From IMG/VR virus record IMGVR_UViG_3300027969_000039, positions 62,001-126,000 of that record: a DNA stretch of 64,000 nucleotides. One strand, 5' to 3'. Numbering within the stretch: position 1 is the stretch's first letter; each line of letters begins with the position of its first letter. The notes beneath the pieces were generated by a model. The model made no database searches, was not told where the DNA came from, and worked only from the letters and a program-made list of their open reading frames with translations. The position numbers and the translations under genes are program-made. Shown here piece by piece: positions 10,794-48,261 of this stretch.

Positions 10794-10822
10794 AGTGTAA
10801 CAGAATTACGCAATAAAGTCAA
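10794..10822 (-). promoter_or_regulatory. sigma70-type promoter for uvsE
   Basis: TTGACT-N17-TACACT. Confidence 0.65.
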
Positions 10823-10840
10823 CTATTTACGGACAACAAC

Positions 10841-12523
10841 ATGAGATTTACCGAATTTATATCTGAGAACGAAAAGCCAGGATTATGGGCAAACATCCAT
10901 GCCAAACGTGACCGAATCAAACATGGATCCGGTGAGCGTATGCGTAAGCCCGGAAGCAAGGGTGCTCCAACAGCAGATGCATTGAGAAAGTCAGCAACTG
11001 ATGAAGCAGCTAATCCAGCACAGCAAGCAGCTATCGCTATCAATATGAAGAAGCATCATCAGAAGCCAAAAGGTGTGGCGGAAAGCGAGTTGGATAAATT
11101 TAAAAAGTATACCAGACCAGTTGTAAAGACTGAACCAAAGATCGAAAGAACAACTAATCCTGCAGGAAGAACAACTGACCATGTTGAATGGAAAGTTACA
11201 AGTCCGACGGGCGAGATTCACAGATATAAATCTAAAAAACAAGCACAAGAGCATTTTGATTCTTTTGGTCAGCAAGGTGTGGCGGAAGGCGACATGTATG
11301 GCGATCAAGAAGTAAGTTGGGAAAAAGGTGGTCGTAGAGCCCCAACTGGTGCATTTAAAAATCCTCATACCAGCGCATTAGGTCGAGCATTATATCGTGA
11401 CCTCAGCAAGCAACCTAAATTAAGCCCGCAACAAGTCCAACGCAACAAAGAGCGTTGGGCACAGCGTCAAGCGGAGCGTGAGCAAGGTGTGGCGGAAGGC
11501 TCTGAAACACCACAACAGCAACAAGTTCGTGCTGCAATTACTAAAGGCATGGAAAAATGGGATAGTAATAATAAGGCTACATATCAGAGTCAACCAACTA
11601 AAACTAATTATATGCCACCCAGCGGTTACGCTAGCGATTCATTGACAGGAGTAGATTCCATTGATCCTGATGGTACCGTGGTCATATCTCTTGGAAATAC
11701 TGGTGCCGAAGCCACAATTAAAAAATTAGCAACATTAGGTGGTATGCCCGGCATTAAAACTAGACAACTGCAATCACCAACCGTTTCATCTAGAGGTGTG
11801 GCGGAAGGCAGAAAGCCATTTCGTGATTTAAAATCTTGGGCTGACCACGCAAAATCACAAGGATTGAAAGTAAGCCCATCTGATCACATTGATTGGACAC
11901 ACGATGCTACTGATAAAGAAGGTAAGGTGCGTGGTAGATTTGTGACTACTAGTGTCCCACAAAATAGTCGAGGATTCATCCACCAGCAAGGTGTGGCGGA
12001 GGGAGAGAGTACTATTCTTTCTCCTGGAACACAAGTTACAGTACCTCACAAGGGAAAAATGGTTTCAGGTAAAATCGTTAGATATGATTCAGGCAAAGGT
12101 ATAGAGTCCCCAGCATATATTGTTGATATCAGCGAATACGAATCACTCATCGTTCCAGTTTCTAGAGTGAAGCAAGACATGGATGAAGGCGAGAATTGGT
12201 CAAAGCACAATAACAAACGTGCAGGCGGGATGAGTAAAAAGAGTGTAGCCAGTTATCGCCGCAGTCATCCTGGAAGCAAGATTCAAACAGCAGTCACAAC
12301 TAAGCCTAGTAAATTAAAGAAGGGCAGTAAGGCAGCAAAACGCCGTGCTAGCTTCTGTGCTAGAATGCGTGGCATGAAGAAACATCGTACTGGTGCGAAA
12401 ACAGCACACGATCCAAACAGCAACATAAATAAAAGTTTGCGTAGATGGCATTGCGAAAGTATTGAAGAACTACACGAATTAGTAATGCTTGCCGAACAAT
12501 TTATTAGGAACAATAAGAAATGA
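10841..12523 (+). CDS. modular putative internal-head polyprotein with GVAE-delimited modules
   Basis: N-terminus MRFTEFISE; five GVAE(G/S) joints separating unrelated 65-103-aa segments. Confidence 0.75.
   Translation: MRFTEFISENEKPGLWANIHAKRDRIKHGSGERMRKPGSKGAPTADALRKSATDEAANPAQQAAIAINMKKHHQKPKGVAESELDKFKKYTRPVVKTEPKIERTTNPAGRTTDHVEWKVTSPTGEIHRYKSKKQAQEHFDSFGQQGVAEGDMYGDQEVSWEKGGRRAPTGAFKNPHTSALGRALYRDLSKQPKLSPQQVQRNKERWAQRQAEREQGVAEGSETPQQQQVRAAITKGMEKWDSNNKATYQSQPTKTNYMPPSGYASDSLTGVDSIDPDGTVVISLGNTGAEATIKKLATLGGMPGIKTRQLQSPTVSSRGVAEGRKPFRDLKSWADHAKSQGLKVSPSDHIDWTHDATDKEGKVRGRFVTTSVPQNSRGFIHQQGVAEGESTILSPGTQVTVPHKGKMVSGKIVRYDSGKGIESPAYIVDISEYESLIVPVSRVKQDMDEGENWSKHNNKRAGGMSKKSVASYRRSHPGSKIQTAVTTKPSKLKKGSKAAKRRASFCARMRGMKKHRTGAKTAHDPNSNINKSLRRWHCESIEELHELVMLAEQFIRNNKK
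11072..12001 (+). repeat. five in-frame direct repeats GGTGTGGCGGA(A/G)
   Basis: copies start at 11072, 11276, 11486, 11795 and 11990; spacings 204, 210, 309 and 195 nt; three copies extend to AGCAAGGTGTGGCGGA. Confidence 0.95.
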
Positions 12524-13098
12524 AAAAACTACTAACGATACTTGCATTGACCTTCTTTGGTTCTGCATTTGCCGGAGAGATTACAGTATGTGATGGACAG
12601 TATGCATTATGTGCTGCTAGTACTTGCAAACCAACTAACAAAACAATTACTGGTAATAACGGCGTAGCATACCCAGAAGTAGAATGCCGTTGCCCAATAC
12701 TTAAAGGTCGTGCTATCGCTGATACATCAGCAGGTAACATGCAAGGTTCATGTGCTGCAACTGATGATAAACATGTTTGGAGTTTGTTTGCTCCTAAACT
12801 TTACTACCCACAAGAGGCTAGCAATTTTAGCAACAAACCAAAAGATAAAAAAGTAACTATACAAAAGTGTGATGCTAGTTTGAATCTAGGTGCAAAGTCT
12901 AGCAATTGCTTTAGTTGGAATTGTACGATAGGTAGTGATGGTATTGCACTATGCTCATGCCCAACTGGTCAAGTACCGGCAAATACTGCATTTTTAACAG
13001 AAGCAGGTCAAGGTAACCCAGAAGCATGTTCACAATACCCAGTAAGTTTACCAATCAAAGCGCAAGATAAGGCTGAAGCTAAGGAAGCAAAAAAATGA
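12520..13098 (+). CDS. secreted Cys-rich protein with internal duplication
   Basis: Sec signal ending AFA; 12 Cys in two halves, each with C-x4-C and CxCP. Confidence 0.7.
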   Translation: MKKLLTILALTFFGSAFAGEITVCDGQYALCAASTCKPTNKTITGNNGVAYPEVECRCPILKGRAIADTSAGNMQGSCAATDDKHVWSLFAPKLYYPQEASNFSNKPKDKKVTIQKCDASLNLGAKSSNCFSWNCTIGSDGIALCSCPTGQVPANTAFLTEAGQGNPEACSQYPVSLPIKAQDKAEAKEAKK

Positions 13099-14840
13099 AC
13101 TTTAAAGAATTACACGAAGGCGCAGAGCCAAATATGCCTGGTGCCCCTAGTGGCATCAAGATTATGACACCTCAGCAGTTCGTTGCTAGTGCAGGTGATT
13201 CAAAATCTGATGAAGAGGTATCAGAAGGCGGTAATGCATTCATGCCAGGCATACAAAATACGGCAGAATACAAAGCAGGTTTTGCAACAGGCAAGTTACC
13301 AGTTCCATATCCTGAAGGTACACAACAATATGCTAGCTATTACAAAGGAGTGATTGATAAGTCTACCCCTAATTTAAATAAAGGTACAGCAGGAAATTCG
13401 TTGACTGAATTTGCCCCTAGTGATGACGGTGATGATGGATTTAGTGAAGAAACACTAAAAGGTCTTGCAGCGCAATGGTGGAATGGTGATGAAGATCCTC
13501 GTGTAGAAAAATTATTGATGGCTGCAGGTTGGGAGATTGGTCAAGATGATGGGTATGACAACGGTGGTGTGTTTGTGGTGCGAGCCGGTGATGACAGTGG
13601 TCATAGTTATCTCAGTTGGCCAGCAGAAGAACTAAATCCTAATTTATCAGAAACACATTTAAATAGAATTCGTAGCTTATCTGGATTAGTTGAAGCAACT
13701 AAACTACCAGCACAAACTCGTGATTTGGATAGTCAAGAATTTCAAGACTATATGAAGCGTATCGTTGGTACACCTGATTTAGACAAAGAAGGTAATGTTA
13801 AAGTAGATAAAAAAGGTAACGAAAAGTATACTACTGGCAAGACCAAAGGTGACAAATACAAGATGCCTTACATCCATCGTAGTAGTGTAGTTACATACTT
13901 AAGCCCAGATGGTAAAACATATGATGAAGATGCAGTTAAACAAACATTAGCAATTCGTCCTAAATCATTATTAAAGCAAAATGAAAAGATGAAACATAGC
14001 AATGGTGAGTTTGAACAATTCTTCAATGTTGGATTTGCAGCATTAGTAGGAATTGCATTAGATGAACAAACTAATAAATTAATCATTGTTAATACTTGTC
14101 CAGGCGCTGGCTCTTGTAAAGTAGAGTGCTTTGCTATGAAAGGCGGCAAGATTCAATTCAAGGCTGCATGGCAAAGTGACGGAAGAATACTAACATATCT
14201 ATTAAATGATCCTGATGGTTTCTTCAATCAACTAAGTAGTGAAATATCTGCTGAGGCACAAGCAGCAGCAAAGGGTGATAAGAAATTCCCTAATGGTTGG
14301 CAAACAACAGTTCGCTGGCATGATGCTGGTGACTTCTTTAGTCCAGAATATTTAGACATGGCATTGAAGATGGCTGCTAAACATCCTGATGTTAAGTTCT
14401 ATGCTTATACTAAAATGGCTGGAGCAGCATTAGCGGATAAGCCAGACAACTTCATTATCAATTGGAGTGAAGGTGCTAACACTGCACAAGAGAAACAAAT
14501 CAAAGCACAAGATCCTAAGTTAGATAAAACAAAGAACAGTCGCATCGTTCCAGAGAAACTATTCTATGACTTATTGGCTAAGGACGAGAAGGGCAATTTA
14601 GCAAAGACTCCAGATGGTGCATGGCAACCTGCAGGGCCGCAAGAATTACAACAAATGAAACAGCGTATTGCAACAGAATACGGTATTAGTGCTAACTCTA
14701 TTTTGAGTTATACTGAGTACATGGCTAAGAGAAATTCAATCCCAGCTGGAATGAAGTACAATGTTATTGTTGCACCAGGTGAAGGTGATGTTAGTGCTAA
14801 CGACCCAGGCGTACTAAGTACCTTATTGCTAAGACATTAA
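13095..14840 (+). CDS. modular protein with C-terminal Gp88-like (Cys-cluster) domain
   Basis: MNFKELHEG leader; short modules; then CPGAGSCKVECFA, RWHDAGDF and FYAYTK motifs. Confidence 0.65.
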   Translation: MNFKELHEGAEPNMPGAPSGIKIMTPQQFVASAGDSKSDEEVSEGGNAFMPGIQNTAEYKAGFATGKLPVPYPEGTQQYASYYKGVIDKSTPNLNKGTAGNSLTEFAPSDDGDDGFSEETLKGLAAQWWNGDEDPRVEKLLMAAGWEIGQDDGYDNGGVFVVRAGDDSGHSYLSWPAEELNPNLSETHLNRIRSLSGLVEATKLPAQTRDLDSQEFQDYMKRIVGTPDLDKEGNVKVDKKGNEKYTTGKTKGDKYKMPYIHRSSVVTYLSPDGKTYDEDAVKQTLAIRPKSLLKQNEKMKHSNGEFEQFFNVGFAALVGIALDEQTNKLIIVNTCPGAGSCKVECFAMKGGKIQFKAAWQSDGRILTYLLNDPDGFFNQLSSEISAEAQAAAKGDKKFPNGWQTTVRWHDAGDFFSPEYLDMALKMAAKHPDVKFYAYTKMAGAALADKPDNFIINWSEGANTAQEKQIKAQDPKLDKTKNSRIVPEKLFYDLLAKDEKGNLAKTPDGAWQPAGPQELQQMKQRIATEYGISANSILSYTEYMAKRNSIPAGMKYNVIVAPGEGDVSANDPGVLSTLLLRH

Positions 14841-33570: not shown

Positions 33571-34104
33571 ATGACAGTCAATCAAATTTTATTAAACCAA
33601 TACTTTGGTACCATTTGGCATCAAAATAGCGATCCTTCCAAGAAGGATACTAAATCAGGGAAACAATTAATAGACAAAATTAATCCCGGTGAATCAGTAC
33701 TAGATGTAGGGTGTGGAACTAATCCTTTTAAAGGAATCATTCCCAATCTAACTGGAATTGATCCGGCTTTTGACCAAGCAGATCACAAGATATCAATTGA
33801 TGATTTTGAAACTAGTGAGAAATATGATGTTGCACTATGTCTGGGTAGTATAAATTTTGGAGGTAGTAGTGACATTGAGAGACAAATTGCCAAAGTCATT
33901 TCATTAATGAAACCAAATGGGAGAATATATTGGCGTTGCAATCCAGGAAGACAAGATCACCCTAGTGATGAATGCAAAAATGTGCCTTTTTATGCATGGT
34001 CTATACAAGAGCATGAGAGACTAACTGCTATGTTTGAAGCACGACTGATTGAATGTTGTTGGGAAGATAATGGTCGTAGAATATACGCTGAATGGAATCT
34101 TTAA
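33571..34104 (+). CDS. class I SAM-dependent methyltransferase
   Basis: VLDVGCG, GID and YDVALCLGSINF motifs. Confidence 0.8.
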   Translation: MTVNQILLNQYFGTIWHQNSDPSKKDTKSGKQLIDKINPGESVLDVGCGTNPFKGIIPNLTGIDPAFDQADHKISIDDFETSEKYDVALCLGSINFGGSSDIERQIAKVISLMKPNGRIYWRCNPGRQDHPSDECKNVPFYAWSIQEHERLTAMFEARLIECCWEDNGRRIYAEWNL

Positions 34105-34913
34105 TCGTCACTCTTACCACACTTAGCACGTTTAGCTTGTGTGAGTTTGCCGAAGTCAACTGGCCATTCTTGGCCTGGTTGTAATTCTTTAGCCCCTTGA
34201 GGGAATCCAAACTTTACACCTGAGGCTTGTTCAATCTGTGTTATAGGTAAACGAAACTTAGTTAAATCATTTCCTAAATTAGGATATGGAACAACATGTG
34301 GGAAACTCCATCCTGCTACTTCTTTAGTTTGATTGTTAATTACTATTTTATAGAAGCCATGTGGAACGATTACTCCATTGCCAATCTTCTTATCAGAAGT
34401 GGAATATAATGCTCCAACATATACGGTATATGATTGGTTCCGTTGAACTGACCATCCACGGACAGATGTTTCCAGTAATTTCCAGATTCCACGATTTAAT
34501 GAGCCAGCCTGGGGCGCCATGTTTGTCATTAAAAAACTCTCAAATTCTACTTGCGTATCCCAAGACAAATCTCCATCAGGAGCCATATGTCCTTTATCGT
34601 AATTAGTTCCAATATAATCATCAGGTCTAGCACCATTAGAAATATACTGATTAGCGGCAAAAGCATTAGTACGAGCCACACAACCCAGTGCATTTTGCGG
34701 AAGTAGTTCATAAGTTACAAACCTTGGTAGTTTTGCAGATGCATCATAACCAACTAGATATGCTTGTTGGCATAGTGGCTGAACACCTTGTGTTTGAGGG
34801 AATCCGTATGGTGCATGTACTTGGCATTGTTGAACTGAATTTGGGGGACGTTGTGTCCAAGCAGATACGGTGAATGAAGCAGTGACTAATAATAGTGATA
34901 TTATTTTTTTCAT
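34101..34913 (-). CDS. secreted DNA/RNA non-specific endonuclease (NucA/EndoG-like)
   Basis: signal peptide; YDKGHMAP, TNMAPQ..LNRGIW..LE and VPHGFYKIV. Confidence 0.9.
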   Translation of the reverse strand: MKKIISLLLVTASFTVSAWTQRPPNSVQQCQVHAPYGFPQTQGVQPLCQQAYLVGYDASAKLPRFVTYELLPQNALGCVARTNAFAANQYISNGARPDDYIGTNYDKGHMAPDGDLSWDTQVEFESFLMTNMAPQAGSLNRGIWKLLETSVRGWSVQRNQSYTVYVGALYSTSDKKIGNGVIVPHGFYKIVINNQTKEVAGWSFPHVVPYPNLGNDLTKFRLPITQIEQASGVKFGFPQGAKELQPGQEWPVDFGKLTQAKRAKCGKSDD

Positions 34914-34914
34914 A

Positions 34915-35355
34915 TTACGCTCGGGCTTTCTTTAGAGTACTACGAATCATCCATTGATGTTTTTCGTGAGCATCTAGCCTCTCAGCGATAAAGTTTGCTA
35001 TACCTTGTTTGTTTTCTTGTGTAGCTGAAGCAAAGCAATGGTTGAGTAAATCAATCATCTTACTGTTATCTTCGAATAATTCAGCAAACATTAATTCAGC
35101 ACGAGGAATTTTAAGTTGGTCTTGAATGATAGATAATTCAGCGTAGCGTGTTAAACTGCCGGGTGCATAACTATCCAATGTACGAATGTATTCAGCAACT
35201 TTATCTACTGCACTATATACTTCTTCATAGAAATTACCAAAGAATTCGTGATATTCAGGGAAGTCAGGTCCTTCAACATTCCAATGAAAGTTCTGTGCTT
35301 TGATGGATAGTGAATTAACGCTAGCCAATAATACTTTTAAATCTTCTGCTAACAT
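34915..35355 (-). CDS. dps: Dps ferritin-like protein
   Basis: FHWNVEG..F...HEFF..FYEE...VD.VAEYIR; HEKHQWM. Confidence 0.9.
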   Translation of the reverse strand: MLAEDLKVLLASVNSLSIKAQNFHWNVEGPDFPEYHEFFGNFYEEVYSAVDKVAEYIRTLDSYAPGSLTRYAELSIIQDQLKIPRAELMFAELFEDNSKMIDLLNHCFASATQENKQGIANFIAERLDAHEKHQWMIRSTLKKARA

Positions 35356-37367
35356 TATTGCTGTCCTTGTTGTTGTAGTAACTGTTTTGCCTTTTCTACA
35401 CTAAGCATTGGGCGAGGATGTGATCCATCTATAATACTTTGTAGATATTCTGCACTATAACCACTTGGTGCTTTTGCTGCTGGTTGTTCATCTGATGGTG
35501 CTACTTGAGTAGCAACTGGTTTACCAGTTAAACGATTAATACCAGGATCTTGATCTGGTAGTACACGACCGTGTGCGGCACCGCCTAATGCCATAGCACC
35601 TGCTAATGCTGCACTACCTAATGCGCTTTTCCAGCCTTCATCTACTTGGTGTACACCTGAAAGTATTGCTGATTCTTTTATTGGTACACAGTTATTAACT
35701 CTAGTATCACCCTTCATCTTAGTGCCTTGTTTTTTATAACCAGTCCAGCATTTAGGATCCATACGTTGTTTTTCTTCATCCATAGTTTGATTACCACTAG
35801 CTTGATCAATTCTGCGTTGTAAGTTAGCTTGCTCATCCGGGGTTGGAGCACCTGGATTACCTCCTGACACTCTTAAGTTTGCAGGTTTTGGTTGTTTTGC
35901 ATTACTTGGTGCTGCTGCTTGTTGACTTTGTTGTGCTAATTTACTAAATTCTTTAGCACCATAACTTACTGCCGCAGTTCTATTTCTTCTCTTTAAACTA
36001 TTTAATCCATCTAGTACATCATCTATTGCATCTTTAGCATCATCGACCGTTCTAAAAGATGATGGTCCAGATGATGGTGCGGCTGCTTGCCCTGCACCAC
36101 CTGATGCTGCACCAGCTGATGGTGCGTATCCTCTACCGCCACTTGCTGCTGACATGCCTGAACCTATTCTACTAGCTGGTACATTACTAGTTGTAGCTGC
36201 ATTGCTTGTAGTTTGTGGTGCTGATGCTCTGGTTTCAGGATTGACTTCACCAGTGTGACCCACATGTTGCATAGCTTGATTGGCTCTTGATGCGTCATAA
36301 CCTGTCATTTTACCGCCACCGTATGCATCTTTCATTCCGGCATATGTTCCTTTTACACTACCAATTGCATCACCTACCCCACCCGCCATACGACCCAATA
36401 ATCCTTGTTTGGGTTGTGCCGGCTGAACCGGTAACGGCTTTGCAGCAGGAAGTTTAAAGTTAGTAAATAAATTATTCAATGTCTCCTGTGGTACACCTGC
36501 TTTAATCATAATATCTGCAATTTGATCACTATCGGTTGGCTTATTTGCTTTATTCCATGCTTGCAATAATTTGTCAGCAGTAATCTTTGTTGTTAAGTTT
36601 TGCCCTTTGGTTTTAGCCCAATCTAGTATACCTTCATCAACTTGTTTTTTATGCTCATTAACTATTCTACCAATTAATCTATAAATTTGTGATTCAGATA
36701 GTTCAAATGATTCATTTCTCATTTGTAGACCATTGACTTCACCCGGCTTAGCAGGAACTCTTTTTGGTGCTATCGCTGATAGTGCAGAAGTAGCCGTAGT
36801 TGGTGGTTTAGGTTGTACTCTAGGAAATTTACTAAAATCACCTGTATCTGTTCTTGTACCATCTGATGGACGACCAACAAGTTCTGTACCTTTGTTTAAT
36901 GCAGCAGTTGCAGCAGCTTGTCTTTGTTGTCTTGCTGCTTGTGCAGCTTGTCCTGCAGGAGTAGTTGGTTCTTCTGCTGCTGAAACTGATGGATCTGCAC
37001 TTGTTGATTGTTTTAATCCTGAAGCTGCAACTGGATTAGGAGTGCTAAACATATCTTTAACTTTGCCAATTGCTGTTCTATTGTTGCCGCCACCTACTAA
37101 GTTAGCAGCACCACCTGCTGATTGAATCTCTTGTGCGCTTTTGAAAATTTGTTGAATTTGTTGAGGGTCAACTGCAACTCCTTCTTTAATTTTTTTTGCA
37201 TCATTATCAAATTGTTTTTTAGTAGCAGTATTGATACCTTTAAAACGTTTGTCGCCTTTTTTGAAGTCACCTTCACTATCAGCTTTGCTAGCATTAGCCG
37301 CAGCAGCAGTTTTGTATTTTGCCAACTTGTCGTTAGATAGTTCTGCTAAAAATTCATTGGTTCTCAT
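35355..37367 (-). CDS. modular putative internal-head polyprotein
   Basis: MRTNEFLAE leader; Ala/Gly-rich linkers; joints IKEG, VDEG and MDEE; CWTGYKK...NCVP module. Confidence 0.7.
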   Translation of the reverse strand: MRTNEFLAELSNDKLAKYKTAAAANASKADSEGDFKKGDKRFKGINTATKKQFDNDAKKIKEGVAVDPQQIQQIFKSAQEIQSAGGAANLVGGGNNRTAIGKVKDMFSTPNPVAASGLKQSTSADPSVSAAEEPTTPAGQAAQAARQQRQAAATAALNKGTELVGRPSDGTRTDTGDFSKFPRVQPKPPTTATSALSAIAPKRVPAKPGEVNGLQMRNESFELSESQIYRLIGRIVNEHKKQVDEGILDWAKTKGQNLTTKITADKLLQAWNKANKPTDSDQIADIMIKAGVPQETLNNLFTNFKLPAAKPLPVQPAQPKQGLLGRMAGGVGDAIGSVKGTYAGMKDAYGGGKMTGYDASRANQAMQHVGHTGEVNPETRASAPQTTSNAATTSNVPASRIGSGMSAASGGRGYAPSAGAASGGAGQAAAPSSGPSSFRTVDDAKDAIDDVLDGLNSLKRRNRTAAVSYGAKEFSKLAQQSQQAAAPSNAKQPKPANLRVSGGNPGAPTPDEQANLQRRIDQASGNQTMDEEKQRMDPKCWTGYKKQGTKMKGDTRVNNCVPIKESAILSGVHQVDEGWKSALGSAALAGAMALGGAAHGRVLPDQDPGINRLTGKPVATQVAPSDEQPAAKAPSGYSAEYLQSIIDGSHPRPMLSVEKAKQLLQQQGQQ

Positions 37368-37369
37368 AA

Positions 37370-39475
37370 TTATGCTTTCTTATTTTTGATAGATTTTTTG
37401 CTTTCGTATGCTATAGAAGCACCGGGTCTAGAAGAAGATGTATATCCTCTATCTTGTAATCTTGCTGGTTCATCACCAGTAGCTGAATATGGAGTGTTAC
37501 TTAGATTGTTTGAATCATGTTGTCTCTGATATTCTTGGTTAGATGCATCCATTTCATCTTTACTAACTAATGGAGGTTGAACATCTGCACGATGTAATTT
37601 GAAATTATAAAACTTGATACCTTTTGATTTCATAAAATCTTTAACTGCTTCTGAAGCCTGTCCCGGGGAGTTATATTCTGTTCCAAGATTGATATCTTTT
37701 GTAATTGATTTACCATCTACTTGAAAAGTAATTTGAGCAACAATAGGTTGTATTTCATGTGCATGTGCTCCTGCCCCGCCCAATGCAGCAGCACCTGCTA
37801 GTGCAGCACCTGCTAAATTACTTTTCCAACCTTCTTCTACTTTTTTCTTAGCAGCATCCCATGCAGCATCAGTCTTTACATTGTATTCTTTGCCACCAGC
37901 GCCAATGTCAGCAACTCTGCTACCAATATCTTTTTTAGTTTTTACAACAGCTTTATTGTGTTTGTTCACACTCTTTTGCATTAATTTACCGAAGTCTGGA
38001 TTGCGTTTAAGGGCCCGTTCATCTTCTGGACTTCTTGAACTTGCTGCTGCTGTTCTCAAATCACCTAAGTCAAATGCTTCCCTCATTCCTGCTACTTTGC
38101 TACCTTGAGTGTTAGCTGCGGTACCGGTACGGCTGGCTTTCATCTTATCTCCACCGCCACCAATGTGTCTACTACCATAATCGGTCTTGTCTGCCTTGCG
38201 TGGCTTTTTATATGGTAATTGTTGAACATTACCACCTTTACTTAAAAATGCTTGTAATGCAGAATCATCTTCCGCTACACCTTCAGCACTATCAGTAGCT
38301 AATACATCTGCAACTGTGCCAATATGATCGTTTGCTACTGTGATATAACTGTATTCCCATGCATCTAATTGATTACCTTGCTTCAACATCTGATGTATCT
38401 GCTTGCAATTCTTTGCAATATTACGCAACTCTCCCATAGCCATTTGTGGAATCTGTTCTCCACCATCACTATCTTCGTATGCAAGTCCACCGGCGATAAC
38501 ACCAGCACCTTCCGTTACCCCTTGCTCTGCTTGATCCATGTACCATTTAAGAATTTTTAGTAATTCAGTAAGTGATTCTTGCCCTTCAGGATTACAGTAG
38601 TTCTTAGCCATTCTAGCTAAGTCGTACATTGTTCGTAAGTTGCTGGTGCTTACATCACCTTCATTCATACCTATCTTACGCATCACCGCTGGAGAAGCGA
38701 TTTTTTTTATCGCTTCTTTTTTTCCTACTTGTGCTGCCCTATTGCTTATTTTTTGTGATACATCATCATAATGTTTTGCCAATGGATTCATATAGCCGCC
38801 ACCTAATGCATTATGCACCTCAGGCTTCATTGCTTGATTACTTTTGTTTTTAGCTAATTGTGCGGATCTTTGTAACAGATCAGAACTGAGTTCATTGATA
38901 GCATCACTATCAGGTTGCATCTCTTGACTGCTGATTAGATAATCCATCACATTAACCATCATACCTTTTGCTGCGCCAATCTTCTCTGATACCCACTCGG
39001 GGAATTCAGATTGAACGGATAATCTCTTATCTAAATCACTAGCAGCACGGGCGATAGTGTGTAGACTGTTCTTTAATGTGTGACCTTCGTGTTCACCATG
39101 GTCTAAGTCATGCTTAACAAATCCAGTTCTTCTTAGTCTACCTTGACCCGGGATAACGATTAAGTCTTGTTCTGCAATTTCCTCTTCGTTGACTTTTGTC
39201 ATGCTTGCTTTGATTTCAGCTTTTGTTTTTCCATATTTCTTTTGAAATTCAGCAGTAGTTAACTCTGTTAAATCTATTGATAGTTCTTTAACTTTGCTTT
39301 CTGTAATGCTATTAGCGTAAGGCCCTTTCTTTTTAGCCTTCCCTTTCATTACTTGTTGTACAGGTTTCAGTCCCGGAACATTAACATTTTCACGGGTTTG
39401 AGTCATCATAGGCTTTGCTACGGTTGCGACTGACCCTGCTGTGGTTGAATTTTCTACTATTTGCTTAAATCTCAT
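37370..39475 (-). CDS. modular putative internal-head polyprotein
   Basis: MRFKQIVE leader; joints QGVTEG, EGVAED, INEL, MNEG and VEEG; ATAAATA upstream (39505-39499). Confidence 0.7.
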   Translation of the reverse strand: MRFKQIVENSTTAGSVATVAKPMMTQTRENVNVPGLKPVQQVMKGKAKKKGPYANSITESKVKELSIDLTELTTAEFQKKYGKTKAEIKASMTKVNEEEIAEQDLIVIPGQGRLRRTGFVKHDLDHGEHEGHTLKNSLHTIARAASDLDKRLSVQSEFPEWVSEKIGAAKGMMVNVMDYLISSQEMQPDSDAINELSSDLLQRSAQLAKNKSNQAMKPEVHNALGGGYMNPLAKHYDDVSQKISNRAAQVGKKEAIKKIASPAVMRKIGMNEGDVSTSNLRTMYDLARMAKNYCNPEGQESLTELLKILKWYMDQAEQGVTEGAGVIAGGLAYEDSDGGEQIPQMAMGELRNIAKNCKQIHQMLKQGNQLDAWEYSYITVANDHIGTVADVLATDSAEGVAEDDSALQAFLSKGGNVQQLPYKKPRKADKTDYGSRHIGGGGDKMKASRTGTAANTQGSKVAGMREAFDLGDLRTAAASSRSPEDERALKRNPDFGKLMQKSVNKHNKAVVKTKKDIGSRVADIGAGGKEYNVKTDAAWDAAKKKVEEGWKSNLAGAALAGAAALGGAGAHAHEIQPIVAQITFQVDGKSITKDINLGTEYNSPGQASEAVKDFMKSKGIKFYNFKLHRADVQPPLVSKDEMDASNQEYQRQHDSNNLSNTPYSATGDEPARLQDRGYTSSSRPGASIAYESKKSIKNKKA

Positions 39476-39528
39476 GACGGTTTCCCAAAGTTATAGAGTA
39501 TTTATCAAAATACCATAATAAGGAAACT

Positions 39529-40935
39529 TTAGATTTTGCCGTTTGCTTTAGCTGTTGGGGGTATTCCAGCACGACTGGTGTTCCAGTAGAATGCTTTTGC
39601 GTTCTTTTTTATACTGTCAGGGTGTACATCTACAGTTAGTGCTGTCTTGAATCGCGGGTCATTCTTTTGTTTTTCGCTTGGAATATATCCACTTGCTTCA
39701 CTTATTCCACCACGATATTGATTATCTTTAACGCCAGCATAAGGACTTACTGGTGGAGTTTTTTCTGCTGCAAATTGCATGGTGTTGTATTCTTCCGCCA
39801 CACCTTTTACTTTTGGATCTAAATCTTTCAAGCTATTCACATCACCTTGCTTGCGCCACTTTGACCACATTTTTTGTCCAGCGGTAGTTTGTGTTTCAGA
39901 AGGCAATACATTGACACCTAACATGCGAATCAAAGCATACATATTTGCGGCTATACCTTGTCCTTGATATTTAGGATCGACTCTGGTCTTCATGCTTGTT
40001 ACACCTTGCACTTCACCTGTATATAGATTTCGTGCTTTGGCAAATTGTGCATCTCCAATTGGATTGAGATTTTTTTTATCATATGCTTTGATAGATAAGA
40101 AATCATTTTTCTTCCCTGCATTTGTAACATGATAAAGTATTCCGTTTATGTCTTGTTTGAAATCTAATCCTGGTTTCCATAACTCATTGTTGAATTGTTC
40201 TTCTTCATCTATGTTCTGATACATAGTCTCAAACGATAACTTCTCACTATGTAACTTGTCTCTTAAATCATATAATTTTGTAATATATCCTTGACTACGC
40301 AACATCTTATATGCTAAATTTTCAGGACCAAACTCACCACCTTTATCTAATCCTGCTTGTCTATATCGTTTGATCGTGTCTATTATATGTTTTACTTTAC
40401 TATATTTTCTTGACTGTAGTGCTATCTCTATCAAACCTAATAACTTTTCATACTTGCTTTTAGTAGAAGTTTGGTCAAAATCACTTCTACGCTTAGTGGG
40501 TATTCTTATCCACTGATCATTCATTACACTGTATTCACCTAAACTTACAACAGGTTGTCTACTGTCTTGTACATATAATTCTACTGGAATTTTATGAATT
40601 GTTATATCATGTGTATCATTGTATATTGTTTTCTTTGCTGTAAATAACTCTTTATATACTTCATTGGTAGGTAAATTACCCATGTCTACTAATATATGTA
40701 AATCTAAATCACTGTGCTTTGTGTAGCTAAATGCAGCATTACTACCTGAGATTGTTATGTCTTTTACATCTAAATCATGTACACCTAATTCTTCTAAAAA
40801 ATCTGCTGCTATCAGCATAAGCTGGTCTCTAACATCTGGTCGCAATTTAGTTTCATTCCATAACTTAGGATTAAGTTTATCGTGGAATGTTACCGCATCA
40901 CTTAGTTTAAAGCTATTAAGTTCTTTTTGATTCAT
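39529..40935 (-). CDS. Pol-beta-family nucleotidyltransferase fused to a GNAT module
   Basis: GSNAAFSYTKHSDLDLH (GS..DxD) and VELYVQD; VDPKYQGQGIA (GNAT motif A) followed by KGVAEE. Confidence 0.8.
   Translation of the reverse strand: MNQKELNSFKLSDAVTFHDKLNPKLWNETKLRPDVRDQLMLIAADFLEELGVHDLDVKDITISGSNAAFSYTKHSDLDLHILVDMGNLPTNEVYKELFTAKKTIYNDTHDITIHKIPVELYVQDSRQPVVSLGEYSVMNDQWIRIPTKRRSDFDQTSTKSKYEKLLGLIEIALQSRKYSKVKHIIDTIKRYRQAGLDKGGEFGPENLAYKMLRSQGYITKLYDLRDKLHSEKLSFETMYQNIDEEEQFNNELWKPGLDFKQDINGILYHVTNAGKKNDFLSIKAYDKKNLNPIGDAQFAKARNLYTGEVQGVTSMKTRVDPKYQGQGIAANMYALIRMLGVNVLPSETQTTAGQKMWSKWRKQGDVNSLKDLDPKVKGVAEEYNTMQFAAEKTPPVSPYAGVKDNQYRGGISEASGYIPSEKQKNDPRFKTALTVDVHPDSIKKNAKAFYWNTSRAGIPPTAKANGKI
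39793..39804 (-). repeat. exact copy of the GGTGTGGCGGAA repeat
   Basis: + strand TTCCGCCACACC; variants at 38270-38281 (GGTGTAGCGGAA) and 38510-38521 (GGGGTAACGGAA). Confidence 0.9.
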
Positions 40936-45293: not shown

Positions 45294-46022
45294 TCAGACA
45301 GGTACGGGTCGCTTTTCTAATTTATAGCGTTTTCCAAGCATATGTCCATACATTAATATCAAATAGCTTAGTGTACTTTCATTGTCATAGTCAATAGAAT
45401 GATTTCCGCTAGTATAGCGATATTGCCAACTATTAATTGAAGCAATTGGGCGTCTAATATAGTCATTTAACCATATTTTCAATGCATTACTTGGAACCAA
45501 TTCTTTACTTTTCTTGATGGTATCGTGCAAATCTTTAATAAAATCTCTTTCTTCAATATACTTAGATTTTAAATAAATTCTATACTTGTGCTTTGGCTCA
45601 TTGACATAATACTTTGTACCAGCAAACTGCTCCAATTGCACTTCTGTGATTTTTACGGTAACTAGTCCAAGATCCTTCAATGTAAGCAACAAATCTAAAT
45701 TGTTGCTGTACACTGACATAGTATCCATCTCAAGTCTGAAAGTTACTAATCCGGGATTTTTGTTACTGTTACGCCAATCAATGAAGTTATTAAGTTCATT
45801 GATTTTCTCCATCGTTACTGCTTTTCTATCTGCTCGTACCTTGCGATATCCGGTCTCATTCAATCTCCTAATCAACTCACCCGGAGATTTAACATAATTA
45901 GTGAATGCTAATCCATCGATAGTAAATTTAGCCCGATATCTATAGTTGTTGTAATAATTAGTTTCCTTATATTCATAAAAATCAATATTAGGAATGTTTT
46001 CAACTGACCTCAATAATCCCAT
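45294..46022 (-). CDS. hypothetical protein
   Basis: 242-aa ORF overlapping the end of clpA. Confidence 0.7.
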   Translation of the reverse strand: MGLLRSVENIPNIDFYEYKETNYYNNYRYRAKFTIDGLAFTNYVKSPGELIRRLNETGYRKVRADRKAVTMEKINELNNFIDWRNSNKNPGLVTFRLEMDTMSVYSNNLDLLLTLKDLGLVTVKITEVQLEQFAGTKYYVNEPKHKYRIYLKSKYIEERDFIKDLHDTIKKSKELVPSNALKIWLNDYIRRPIASINSWQYRYTSGNHSIDYDNESTLSYLILMYGHMLGKRYKLEKRPVPV

Positions 46023-48261
46023 CTTCGTTCACCTTGGCTGTTAGTTTATGTGTTACTGCAAAATCAATTGCACCTTCGTTCATCACTACATTGATTGTAG
46101 CAGATTTAATACGTTCAAACAAGACTTTTTTACTTAGAGGTACCCGAATCAATTCATCAATCTTGCGACTTAATGGTCGTGCGCCCATCTTCTTATCGTA
46201 TCCTTGCTCTGCCAAATACTCAACTACTGGTTCACTTAGATTCAATACAATATCATGCTTGTCAACCAAACTCTTTTTCAAGTCATCGGTAAACTTGATA
46301 ACAATCTTCTTAATCGCAAGTGTATCCAATTTGTTAAACTTGCAAATCAAGTCAACACGATTTCTAAACTCGGGCTTGAAGAATTCTTTCAATGCTTTGT
46401 CATCTTCACCGGTCTTCTCTTGTGTGCCGAAGCCGATGTTGTTGCGTTCGCTATCACTACTACCTAAATTACTGGTCATGATAATGATACTGTTCTTACA
46501 GTTAACTTGCTTACCATTACTTCCAGTGATATGACCTTCGTCCAACATCTGCAAGAAGATGTTAAAGATATCTGGATGTGCTTTCTCAACTTCATCAAAC
46601 AACATGATCGAATGTGGGTTCTTGCTCAAGTCATTGATCAATCGTCCACCTGACACTTGACTATCACCAAACCCAACATAACCCGGGGGAGGTCCAATCA
46701 AACTACTTACGCTATGTTTTTCTGAGTATTCGCTCATGTCATACTTAAGCAACGGCATGTCTAAATTCTTGCTTAGTAGTTTAGCAAGTTCAGTCTTACC
46801 GGTACCAGTTGGTCCCAAGAACAAGAAACTACCTGTTGGCTTAGTGTCATTACCAATACCAGCAAAGTTAACATAGACTCGCTCAAGTACCTGTTGTACA
46901 GTTTCATCTTGTCCGTATAGTTTGTCTTTGATGTTTGATTCTAAATTTTGAATCAATTCAAAGTTATCACCCTTCATTTTATCAGCAGGTACTCCAGTGA
47001 ATCGTTCAACTTGGTCAAACACAAGTTCTTTAGTAATGATTGCACCTTTGTTTTCTGCTACACGCTGTTTAGCACAAGCAGCATCAAGCAAATCAATAGA
47101 TTTATCTGGGTTCTTACGGTCATGAATATAGCGGTCAGCACTTTCAACTGCTGCTTTGATTGCCTCATCAGTAATTTCAACATTGTGAAAATCATTTAGT
47201 CTAAGACTCAATCCATTAAGAATGCGAATTGTTGTATCGTGGTTAGGTTCATCAACTGAGATACGATAGAACCTACGCATCAACGCACGGTCCTTCTCAA
47301 AGCTATCATAGTATTCTTCCCATGTTGTACTAGCAATAACTTTAAGAGTACCTTTAGTAATTGCAGGTTTAATCATGTTACTGAAATCAACCGACCCATT
47401 GTTAGCACCACCTGCGCCTTGCATAGTATGTGCCTCGTCAATAAAAAGAATAGTCTTTTTCTTTGTGTTCAATGCCTCAAGTACTTGCTTAACCTTTTCC
47501 TCAAAGTCACCGCGATACTTACTACCTGCAAGTAGTGACCCAATCTCTAAACTGTATAGTTGATGGTCTTGCAAGAATTCAGGCACTTCTTTATTAATCA
47601 TCATCTGTGCTAGACCTTCAGCAATTGCTGTTTTACCAACACCAGGATCACCGACCATCAATACATTACTCTTAAACCGTTTAGCAAGTACGTTAATGAT
47701 ATCATCAAGTTCTTTGCTACGACCAATCAATGGCTCAAGTTTACCTTGTGCTGCTAGTTGTGTCAGGTTGATTGTGTATTCTTCTAGTATCTCATCAGCT
47801 TGGTTCTCTGTTAGATTTCCAGTCTCACCATGCTTATAATGTTTTTGCCAATGTGATACAAATTCGTTTTTGTTAATTCCGTATTTCAACAAGAAATAAT
47901 GTGCATGGCTATTGCCTTCTGACGCAATGCTTAAGTATAAGTCAACAGTAGTAACCTGTCTACGACCACTAAACAATACTTGTGTGACGCAACGATTCAT
48001 AACACGCTCTAAACTATTTGTTTTGCGTGGAACTACATCGTCATCTTTGCTTACGATAGCATGTAAACTATCTAAGTATGCATTAATCTCTTGATCCATT
48101 GTTTCAACGTCTGCACCAAAACTATGCAAACATTTTTTGAATGAATTATGATTTATCAGTCCAAGTAGTAAATGTTCCACGGTTACATATTGATGTTTTC
48201 TTTCTTTAGCATAATGAATCGCTTGTTCAATAATACTATCTATTTCGGGTGAATGGTTCAT
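46000..48261 (-). CDS. clpA: ClpA-like Hsp100 AAA+ chaperone
   Basis: Clp N-domain (EHLLL); GDPGVGKT and GPTGTGKT Walker A motifs; IGF ClpP-docking loop. Confidence 0.92.

What the first reader, a model, noticed from the sequence alone, without database searches (positions are those of the whole stretch)
38270..39804. The same repeat marks module borders in two other genes 27 kb away on the opposite strand
Seen: an exact GGTGTGGCGGAA at 39804-39793 ends the GNAT module of the NTase gene. Variants at 38281-38270 (GGTGTAGCGGAA) and 38521-38510 (GAGCAAGGGGTAACGGAAGG) bracket an 80-codon module in 37370-39475. Inference: the motif is not a local tandem duplication but a dispersed junction shared by different scaffold genes, which could allow modules to move between genes. 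The degenerate copies may be older insertions.
Basis: partly seen in the sequence, partly recalled or inferred. Interest (0 to 1): 0.75.

Follow-up and report, generated by a model that had tools for sequence, protein, structure and literature searches.

The report
In-frame cassette junction in phage head proteins
A 12-20 base sequence that reads Gly-Val-Ala-Glu marks the exact points where protein modules are swapped between genes of giant T4-like freshwater phages, and it probably also serves as the cutting site that frees those modules inside the phage head.

Summary
GGTGTGGCGGAA occurs 7 times (1 mismatch or fewer) in the window against 0.08 expected. These are the only copies in the 303 kb genome. 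All are in frame (G-V-A-E) on the coding strand of three genes.

In more than 200 related viral contigs the motif stays identical at the nucleotide level. It uses Val and Ala codons that are rare in these genes, while its flanks are unrelated. Blocks of 97-100% identical DNA begin and end exactly at motif copies. One 328-nt cassette is 99% identical in a phage whose capsid protein is only 75% identical.

Relatives replace the GNAT module and the 80-codon module at the motif. One relative carries a module of the distant + strand gene in place of the 80-codon module.

The genome encodes T4-type prohead protease, scaffold and capsid proteins. Most motif genes start with a T4-like capsid-targeting leader, and every module border reads [M/I/L/V]-x-Glu, close to T4's L/I-x-Glu cleavage rule.

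Best reading: head-packaged polyproteins, cut into small proteins of about 76 residues, whose cleavage linker is also a G+C-rich microhomology for in-frame cassette exchange. The exchange is shown. Cleavage, packaging and the recombination mechanism are inferred.

The parts
39793..39804 (-). Exact motif copy GGTGTGGCGGAA (G378-V-A-E381). It forms the border between the GNAT cassette and the conserved C-terminal part of the NTase-scaffold gene.
   Evidence: Homology to L005, L077 and L078 resumes here, and L004 has an insertion right after it.
38270..38281 (-). Motif copy with 1 synonymous mismatch, GGTGTAGCGGAA (GVAE 399-402). It is the 3' border of the 80-codon cassette.
   Evidence: Homology to L054 and L055 starts at this site.
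38510..38521 (-). Degenerate motif copy GGGGTAACGGAA (GVTE 319-322, 3 mismatches). It is the 5' border of the 80-codon cassette.
   Evidence: The orthologous site is exact in L005 and is followed there by a different cassette.
38270..38509 (-). 80-codon cassette (residues 323-402, including its 3' motif). Function unknown. Present in L004 and L078, absent in L005 and L077.
37370..39475 (-). Gene P0002 (701 aa), a mosaic protein with the capsid-targeting-like leader MRFKQIVE (39449-39475).
39529..40935 (-). Gene P0003 (468 aa). It comprises a pol-beta-type NTase domain (40201-40935, ends NIDE), a GNAT cassette (39793-40200), a 32-aa peptide ending GISE (39697-39792) and a conserved C-terminal tail (39532-39696).
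10841..12523 (+). Gene P0001 (560 aa). It has the leader MRFTEFISE, then six modules separated by motif copies at 11072-11083, 11276-11287, 11486-11497, 11795-11806 and 11990-12001. The last module carries DUF6321.
35355..37367 (-). Gene P0004 (670 aa) with the leader MRTNEFLAE. It belongs to the same leader-bearing class, has no motif copy, and is mosaic against L004 and L077.
13095..14840 (+). Leader-bearing gene (MNFKELHEG, 581 aa, GP88 domain). Its relatives in other contigs carry motif copies.

Best explanation
The motif is a linker with two roles in a family of mosaic genes of giant T4-like freshwater phages.

Protein level (inferred). The genes encode polyproteins that the phage loads into its prohead by an N-terminal capsid-targeting leader. 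The T4 gp21-type prohead protease cuts after the Glu of (Q)GVAE and of the other [M/I/L/V]-x-E borders. This frees small proteins (median 76 residues) and enzymes (NTase, GNAT, deaminase and others). They would travel in the head and probably enter the host with the DNA, as T4 internal proteins and Alt do.

DNA level. The exchange itself is shown; its mechanism is inferred. The same 15-18 nt, CAA GGT GTG GCG GAA GGC, is kept identical in hundreds of places. It is G+C- and G/T-rich and unique in an A+T-rich genome. It acts as a portable microhomology at which homologous recombination swaps, inserts or deletes whole modules. Every copy is in the same codon phase and every module carries its own cleavage site, so any exchange between two copies gives an open frame and a processable product.
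For: Shown:
- The motif is non-random, in frame and limited to three genes.
- It is conserved at the nucleotide level. In 117 unique contexts GTG is used 86% of the time and GCG 91%, against 12% and 5.7% elsewhere in the same genes. The exact 12-mer occurs in 80 of 117 contexts against an expected fraction of 0.0027.
- Within this genome V-A-E occurs 28 times elsewhere and never uses GCG. That includes the scaffold protein's LVAEG.
- The leader peptide is conserved, but its codons follow background usage.
- The flanks of the motif carry no information.
- Homology blocks start and stop at the motif. L020 is 100% identical over gene nt 230-448 and L034 is 99% identical over nt 641-968, each bracketed by two copies with unrelated flanks.
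- 253 of 746 block ends lie within 15 nt of a copy, against 12.6 +/- 3.5 expected.
- 25 of 31 short blocks of 97% identity or more have both ends at a copy.
- 340 of 347 motif sites with any homology evidence are breakpoints.
- Contigs from other freshwater metagenomes join motif 1 to motif 2 (skips 204 nt, 14 nt shared) and motif 3 to motif 5 (skips 504 nt, 16 nt shared).
- L034's phage shares only 75% capsid-protein identity with this one.
- The genome encodes Peptidase_S77 (E 4e-29), a T4-type capsid protein (E 8e-99), a syntenic scaffold gene and a RecA/UvsX-like gene. Four of five other large motif-bearing contigs also have the protease.
- The leaders MRFTEFISE and MRTNEFLAE, and MKTYQFITE in relatives, resemble T4 IPII/IPIII MKTYQEFIAE.
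- Every border before the conserved NTase tail reads [M/I/L/V]-x-E. The T4 rule is L/I-x-E (PMC9026906).

Weak support: the motif lies in a coil region of low confidence between the GNAT core and the tail.
Against: - There is no proteomic or expression evidence. Cleavage and packaging are inferred from sequence likeness only.
- Position P3 is Val, not the Leu or Ile of T4.
- The NTase gene's N-terminus (MNQKELNSF) has no Glu at the processing position and is shared with NTase homologues of unrelated phages. Its packaging is therefore uncertain.
- 15-20 nt is short for RecA-type recombination, and no recombination intermediate was seen.
- The loci were gathered by homology to these genes or by the motif itself, and some contigs are redundant. 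The enrichment figures are not from independent events.
- Nucleotide conservation could serve another, unseen function.
Confidence: 0.62

Rival explanations
1. A dedicated sequence-specific system moves the cassettes. A phage nuclease, recombinase or homing-type enzyme would recognise the 15-18 nt site, as integrase does for integron cassettes or Rci for shufflons. General homologous recombination would not be the agent.
For: The site is sharply delimited and kept identical over great divergence, with breakpoints inside it. It is shorter than the homology usually needed for efficient RecA-type exchange (my recollection of T4 work, not checked here).
Against: No recombinase or integrase lies next to the motif genes. 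The neighbours are UvdE, an epimerase, a ferritin-like protein, a methyltransferase and a non-specific nuclease. The site has no inverted repeat or common fold. PeSL cassettes of T4-type phages shuffle without a known dedicated enzyme (PMC2839356).
Confidence: 0.15
2. The motif is only a peptide signal, either a protease site or a flexible linker. Its DNA identity would be a by-product of common descent or biased gene conversion and would have no role in promoting exchange.
For: All module borders keep [M/I/L/V]-x-E even where the nucleotide motif is absent, for example IDE, ISE, LNE and MSE. The copy at 38510-38521 has drifted by 3 nt while keeping G-V-x-E.
Against: Rare codons are used at 86-91% in unrelated contexts. 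The same tripeptide elsewhere in the genome never uses them. The conserved leader shows free synonymous sites. Breakpoints of near-identical blocks fall within the motif itself.
Confidence: 0.13
3. The nucleotide motif acts in the mRNA. It could be a pause site (rare codons, Shine-Dalgarno-like AAGGTG and GGAAGG) that lets each module fold, an internal ribosome entry point, or a binding site for an RNA-binding protein.
For: The motif contains Shine-Dalgarno-like strings and two rare codons, and it is always on the coding strand.
Against: No start codon is conserved downstream, and flank information is at most about 0.2 bit. The eight sites have no common RNA fold, with z from +0.55 to -2.07. 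There is no Rfam match. A pause function does not explain why homology blocks end at the motif.
Confidence: 0.06
4. The mosaic pattern is an assembly artefact: metagenome assemblers joined different phages at the shared repeat.
For: All relatives are metagenomic contigs.
Against: The shared stretch (12-20 nt) is shorter than the assembly k-mers (Logan uses 31), so it cannot by itself create joins. The same architectures recur in independent samples and assemblies: the window's genes are identical in three IMG/VR contigs. All joins keep the reading frame.
Confidence: 0.02

Closest known systems
T4 internal proteins (IPI, IPII, IPIII, Alt) with a capsid-targeting sequence, processed by gp21
   Same: Both have an N-terminal leader of about 10 residues like MKTYQEFIAE ending in a hydrophobic-x-Glu site, and a gp21-type protease, scaffold and gp23-type capsid protein in the genome. 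The cargo is small, basic, hypervariable proteins and enzymes. The T-even IP repertoire is described as highly diverse with only the leader conserved (PMC3012670, PMC9026906).
   Different: T4 IPs are single proteins, each with its own gene and leader. Here several cargo modules are strung in one reading frame behind one leader, separated by internal cleavage-type sites. The internal site is conserved as DNA.
PeSL cassettes of T4-type phages (promoter-early stem-loops) and the PeSL-like elements at T-even IP loci
   Same: Short conserved sequences flank variable units and serve as crossover points for insertion, deletion and replacement. No dedicated recombinase is known. The authors compare the system to integrons (PMC2839356, PMC4122927).
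   Different: PeSLs are intergenic regulatory units (promoter plus terminator) that move whole genes. The present motif is intragenic and in frame, has no promoter or stem-loop, and moves protein modules.
Glycine-rich motifs between hypervariable segments of the gp38 adhesin of T-even phages
   Same: Conserved in-frame motifs separate variable segments within one gene, and exchanges map to the conserved parts (PMC3157838).
   Different: Those motifs are described as the structural core of one folded domain, in fixed order, in one gene. Here the motif is a linker between independent modules and is shared by unrelated genes.
Head and ejection proteins of phiKZ, 201phi2-1 and SPN3US, cut at S/A-x-E or A-x-E
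   Same: These are giant phages with a diverged gp21-type protease that cuts many head proteins after Glu, some at several sites (PMC9026906).
   Different: The papers I read report no nucleotide-conserved site and no cassette exchange at the sites. The cleavage rule differs at P3.
Integron gene cassettes
   Same: Both are arrays of exchangeable units bounded by a recurring site.
   Different: Integrons use an integrase and structured attC sites and move whole genes behind a promoter. None of this was found here.

Membership tests
T4-type capsid-targeted internal (head-packaged) proteins | An N-terminal leader of about 10-19 residues resembling MKTYQEFIAE or MKTFKEF..., ending in a gp21 site | tested here: met
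   P0001 has MRFTEFISE, P0004 has MRTNEFLAE and P0002 has MRFKQIVE. T4 IPII and IPIII were read from NC_000866. Of 146 5'-complete motif ORFs, 88 fit a strict pattern, against 185 of 1119 other ORFs. P0003 (MNQKELNSF) does not clearly fit.
T4-type capsid-targeted internal (head-packaged) proteins | The phage has the gp21 prohead protease, a scaffolding core and a gp23-type capsid | tested here: met
   PF03420 hits at E 4e-29 and PF07068 at E 8e-99, both above their cut-offs. A coiled-coil ORF lies between them.
T4-type capsid-targeted internal (head-packaged) proteins | The protein is found in the mature head, with the leader removed | not testable with these tools
   This needs virion proteomics. 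No cultured close relative was found.
gp21-type cleavage site (L/I-x-E, cut after Glu) | Glu at P1 and a hydrophobic residue at P3 | tested here: inconclusive
   V-A-E has Val at P3, not Leu or Ile. All borders before the NTase tail are [M/I/L/V]-x-E. The capsid protein has L-A-E just N-terminal of the conserved fold. A fold of protease plus peptide gave no verdict.
PeSL regulatory cassettes | An intergenic sigma-70-like promoter plus a stem-loop terminator | tested here: not met
   The motif is inside ORFs and in frame, and has no common fold.
Integron or shufflon-type site-specific cassettes | A dedicated recombinase gene and structured or inverted recombination sites | tested here: not met
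   No recombinase lies near the motif genes. The copies are direct repeats without a shared structure. The rest of the 303 kb genome was not searched for recombinases.
GNAT acetyltransferase (module 246-381 of P0003) | The GNAT fold with the Q/R-x-x-G-x-G/A acetyl-CoA motif | tested here: met
   Pfam is below threshold (E 0.045-0.07). The module aligns at E 1e-15 to the Pfam-positive GNAT of P0018. Model residues 256-347 match GNAT structures with Z up to 8.9 in nearly all of the top 50 rows. The model as a whole is of low confidence. Activity was not tested.
Pol-beta-type nucleotidyltransferase (residues 1-245 of P0003) | The G-[GS]-x9-13-D-x-[DE] motif and the fold | tested here: inconclusive
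   G-S-x10-D-L-D is present. Pfam NTP_transf_2 and Polbeta score only E 0.04-0.09. One tblastn hit is annotated as aminoglycoside nucleotidyltransferase. The model of this part is poor.

The most novel reading that the evidence does not exclude
A major lineage of giant freshwater T4-like phages may run an integron-like system that works inside reading frames. A universal 15-18 nt linker would be both a prohead-protease site and a recombination site. Effector modules would circulate between genes and between distantly related phages, possibly as excised circles like PeSL mini-circles. They would be plugged behind any capsid-targeting leader, so the cargo injected into the host could be re-assorted at will. 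The nucleotide sequence would be kept by selection for exchangeability, or by a recognising enzyme not yet identified.
Probability: 0.3. Interest if true: 0.9.

Novelty: new variant of a known kind. Interest (0 to 1): 0.8.

Why it matters
Conserved linker sequences at module borders were proposed decades ago as the means of modular evolution in phages, but clear examples are few and nearly all lie between genes. This is a clean case inside genes, with hundreds of copies. One short sequence keeps the reading frame, supplies the processing site and marks the crossover point.

If the cleavage and packaging inferences hold, it shows how phages can shuffle a repertoire of proteins delivered with the DNA, which are likely tools against host defences, at the level of single domains and across phages as far apart as 75% capsid identity.

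It also gives a simple search key. The 17-mer, together with a leader, picks out candidate injected effectors in metagenomes. It further suggests a natural design for multi-cargo packaging in T4-type capsids.

Tried and rejected
- Megablast of the region and tblastn of P0002 against cultured phages found nothing. The nearest cultured capsid proteins are only about 65% identical: Vibrio phage 2.275.O and Pseudomonas PA5oct.
- Pfam and PHROGs on whole proteins and on single modules were mostly blank or below threshold.
- A profile search of solved structures found nothing.
- An Atlas search of the 80-aa module returned only small viral hypothetical proteins at lead-level scores.
- Rfam had no match, and folds of the eight sites shared no structure.
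- I rejected internal translation starts after the motif because no start codon is conserved there.
- I rejected tandem duplication because the modules are not homologous.
- EGVAV in P0004 is not a decayed copy, because it uses ordinary codons.
- The fold of protease plus a 40-residue substrate piece gave no verdict and counts neither way.
- The UvsY Pfam search was blank, but it was blank in the control genomes too, so it says nothing.
- The literature search for 'GVAE' returned only unrelated uses, 'DUF6321' returned nothing, and Repoila et al. 1994 is not held. I found no paper describing this motif in four further searches. That is no proof that none exists.
- My first single-linkage clustering of modules merged most modules into one cluster, so I dropped it for boundary-based tests.
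Full report
**1. The observation**

The exact GGTGTGGCGGAA lies at 39804-39793 in ORF 39529-40935 (P0003). GGTGTAGCGGAA lies at 38281-38270 and GGGGTAACGGAA at 38521-38510, both in ORF 37370-39475 (P0002). All are in one codon phase and read G-V-A-E or G-V-T-E. The two copies in P0002 bracket exactly 80 codons.

Five more copies, four of them exact, lie at 11072-12001 on the + strand in ORF 10841-12523 (P0001). The window holds 7 matches at 1 mismatch or fewer against 0.08 expected. The window is bases 62001-126000 of a 303 kb viral record, and the whole record has no other copy. The peptide GVAE occurs only in these three genes. The modules between copies are not related to each other, and the repeat itself is only 17-23 nt long.

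**2. What kind of genome this is**

The record encodes a T4-type prohead protease (Peptidase_S77, E 4e-29), a coiled-coil scaffold-like ORF next to it, and a T4 gp23-type major capsid protein (E 8e-99). The window also holds a family-B DNA polymerase and a Lon-like protease. A RecA/UvsX-like gene lies elsewhere in the genome.

The nearest cultured capsid proteins, about 65% identical, belong to the giant phages Vibrio 2.275.O and Pseudomonas PA5oct. Sequencing runs that hold the region are freshwater, lake and river metagenomes.

**3. The motif is conserved as DNA, not only as peptide**

Searches in IMG/VR with P0001 and P0002 returned 91 loci.

All 160 motif hits in the first set lie on the coding strand. 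All 103 hits of the 17-mer in 80 loci of the second set are in frame in long ORFs.

Of 147 GVAE peptides, 102 are encoded by the exact 12-mer. In 117 unique contexts Val is GTG in 86% and Ala is GCG in 91%, although these codons make up 12% and 5.7% of Val and Ala codons elsewhere in the same genes. The exact 12-mer is seen in 80 of 117 contexts against an expected fraction of 0.0027.

The conserved stretch extends to A-R-CAA before and GGC after the 12-mer. Beyond that the flanks carry almost no information.

Two controls show this is special to the motif. In this genome the tripeptide V-A-E occurs 28 times elsewhere, including LVAEG in the scaffold protein, and never uses GCG. In 153 unique leader-bearing ORFs the conserved leader residues use codons at background frequencies.

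**4. The motif is where modules are exchanged**

BLASTN of the window genes against the loci shows homology blocks that start and stop at motif copies.
- L020 is 100% identical to P0001-gene nt 230-448, with copies at 232 and 436. The rest of the gene is 76-91% identical or unrelated.
- L034 is 99.1% identical over nt 641-968, with copies at 646 and 955.
- The alignments show identity beginning within the left copy and ending within the right copy, with unrelated flanks.
- L034 lies in a phage whose capsid protein is only 75% identical to this one, so the cassette is a recent transfer between distant phages.

Over all loci:
- 253 of 746 internal ends of blocks with 90% identity or more lie within 15 nt of a copy, against 12.6 +/- 3.5 expected. 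Left ends sit just before the motif and right ends in or just after it.
- Of 31 short blocks with 97% identity or more and unrelated flanks on both sides, 25 have both ends at a copy.
- Of 347 motif-like sites with any homology evidence, 340 are breakpoints and only 7 are only ever spanned.

Contigs from other freshwater samples laid on 10800-12600 show joints from motif 1 to motif 2 (skips 204 nt, 14 nt shared) and from motif 3 to motif 5 (skips 504 nt, 16 nt shared), among others.

The shared stretch is shorter than assembly k-mers, so assembler chimeras are an unlikely cause.

These figures come from loci chosen by homology or by the motif, with some redundancy. The effect size matters more than the nominal significance.

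**5. The two genes of the finding**

*NTase gene (P0003).* Relatives share residues 1-245, which end ...QNIDE, and the C-terminal part from EYNTMQ... onwards. Between these the window and L004 carry the GNAT module, while L005 and L078 carry other modules. Homology resumes at QGVAE. L004 has a second module inserted right after GVAE. L005 has a further GNAT-like insert between GISE and LNE.

A search of the large protein collection found 1991 relatives. The best 120 keep the two ends at up to 95% identity and differ in a middle part of about 60-500 residues. That part holds GNATs, a cytidine/dCMP deaminase domain, DUF6934, DUF6886 and unknown modules.

*P0002.* L005 has the exact motif where the window has the degenerate GVTE copy. 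After it L005 carries a module homologous to P0001 module 3 instead of the 80-codon module. L077 lacks the 80-codon module, while L004 and L078 keep it. Homology to L054 and L055 starts at the second copy.

So a module of the + strand gene 27 kb away sits in the P0002 orthologue of a relative, joined at the motif.

**6. Why the peptide matters: a likely protease site in head-packaged proteins**

T4 gp21 cuts after Glu in L/I-x-E. T4 internal proteins carry a 10-19-residue capsid-targeting leader that is removed at such a site (PMC9026906). T4 IPII and IPIII begin MKTYQEFIAE.

P0001, P0004 and P0002 begin MRFTEFISE, MRTNEFLAE and MRFKQIVE. Relatives show MKTYQFITE, MNFKELLEG and many similar starts. 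One relative has the leader followed directly by the motif, MRATEFIIEGVAEG.

V-A-E fits the rule in relaxed form. More telling, every junction before the conserved NTase tail reads [M/I/L/V]-x-E, whatever module precedes it (MSE, ISE, VAE, LNE, INE, LEE and others). The NTase domain ends I-D-E. Indel borders in P0002 relatives also fall at ITE and INE.

The capsid protein has L-A-E just before the start of the conserved fold. This is comparable to T4 gp23's L-T-E; that the T4 cut is after Glu65 is my recollection.

Cassettes between neighbouring copies have a median of 76 residues (interquartile range 61-130, n = 213). That is the size of mature T4 IPI and IPII. P0001's modules are net basic.

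Four of five other large motif-bearing contigs encode the protease, and the fifth is incomplete. Each has 1-8 exact copies against 0 for the reversed control.

In the low-confidence model of P0003 the motif lies in a coil segment after the GNAT core. Cleavage and packaging remain inferences.

**7. How it most likely works**

*Shown.* There is a nucleotide-identical, phase-locked linker, and cassette gain, loss and replacement occur with crossovers in it, within genes, between genes and between distant phages.

*Inferred.* Recombination uses the phage's own homologous recombination functions (a RecA/UvsX-like gene is present) on a short microhomology. That microhomology is G+C-rich (11 of 15 bases in a 37% G+C genome) and otherwise unique. 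This could explain the choice of rare codons. From memory, RecA-family proteins prefer G/T-rich DNA and T4 can recombine over short homology; I did not check either point.

Exchange between two direct copies would delete a cassette and could release a circle, as shown for PeSL mini-circles in T4-type phages (PMC2839356). I saw no direct evidence for circles.

Copies that are not used seem to drift. The site at 38510-38521 has 3 mismatches in the window and 2 in L004, and is exact in the recombinant L005. This fits maintenance by turnover rather than a need for the exact bases in each gene, though the numbers are small.

**8. Comparison with what is known**

The parts are known: capsid-targeting leaders and hypervariable internal proteins of T-even phages (PMC3012670), multi-site processing of head proteins in giant phages (PMC9026906), PeSL-mediated gene shuffling (PMC2839356, PMC4122927), and conserved motifs between variable segments in gp38 (PMC3157838).

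I could not find the combination described anywhere: several cargo modules in one frame behind one leader, separated by a cleavage-type site that is conserved as DNA and used as the crossover point by unrelated genes. I file it as a new variant of a known kind. It is not a PeSL, an integron or a shufflon by their defining features.

**9. Verdict**

- Motif is a cassette junction at the DNA level: about 0.9.
- Motif is also a prohead-protease site: about 0.7.
- The proteins are head cargo: about 0.65.
- The full two-role account: about 0.6.

Noticed in passing
37754-37834 (-) in P0002 and 35559-35639 (-) in P0004: A second block is shared by two neighbouring leader-bearing genes: V-[ED]-E-G-W-K-S followed by an Ala/Gly-rich hydrophobic stretch that looks like a membrane helix. 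The same block recurs in L052, L053, L068, L070 and L083 and matches several PHROGs of unknown function. It begins at another hydrophobic-x-Glu site.
   Followed up: partly
12179-12520 (+), last module of P0001: The C-terminal DUF6321 domain, very basic and starting right after M-D-E, is shared with hundreds of cyanophages, pelagiphages and even 38 kb Prochlorococcus podoviruses. It is far more widespread than the motif or the leader.
   Followed up: partly
window 10841, 13095, 35355, 37370, 58507; also genome 47949-48326 and 48323-48715: The genome holds a family of at least seven ORFs starting M-R/N-x-x-E-F/L-I/L-x-E ([27 protein letters not shown] and others). Only two of them carry the motif.
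   Followed up: partly
34101-34913 (-) and 34915-35355 (-): A DNA/RNA non-specific endonuclease (Endonuclease_NS, E 7e-40) and a ferritin-like protein lie directly downstream of the leader-bearing genes. Whether they are also head cargo was not examined.
   Followed up: no
46000-48261 (-): A large ATP-dependent protease (PHROG 4871, E 3e-237) is encoded 6 kb from the finding. It would be an alternative candidate for processing, but I found nothing linking it to the motif.
   Followed up: no
relatives of P0003 (P0020, P0022, P0105, P0112; P0012): At the same slot as the window's GNAT, relatives carry a cytidine/dCMP deaminase domain (PF00383), DUF6934, DUF6886 and a sub-threshold Tpt1/KptA-like stretch. 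The locus therefore collects nucleotide- and nucleic-acid-modifying enzymes.
   Followed up: partly
L079:6146-8390 and L091:2027-4135: Some relatives have much longer arrays: nine and seven motif copies in one ORF, with cassettes of 42-83 residues.
   Followed up: no
11049-11071 (+) and equivalents in L017, L037, L048, L088, L089, L091: After the widely conserved peptide NPAQQAAIAINMKKHHQKPK, the next residues are always x-Glu (NE, SE, TE) even where the motif is absent. P3 is Lys there, which does not fit the L/I-x-E rule.
   Followed up: no
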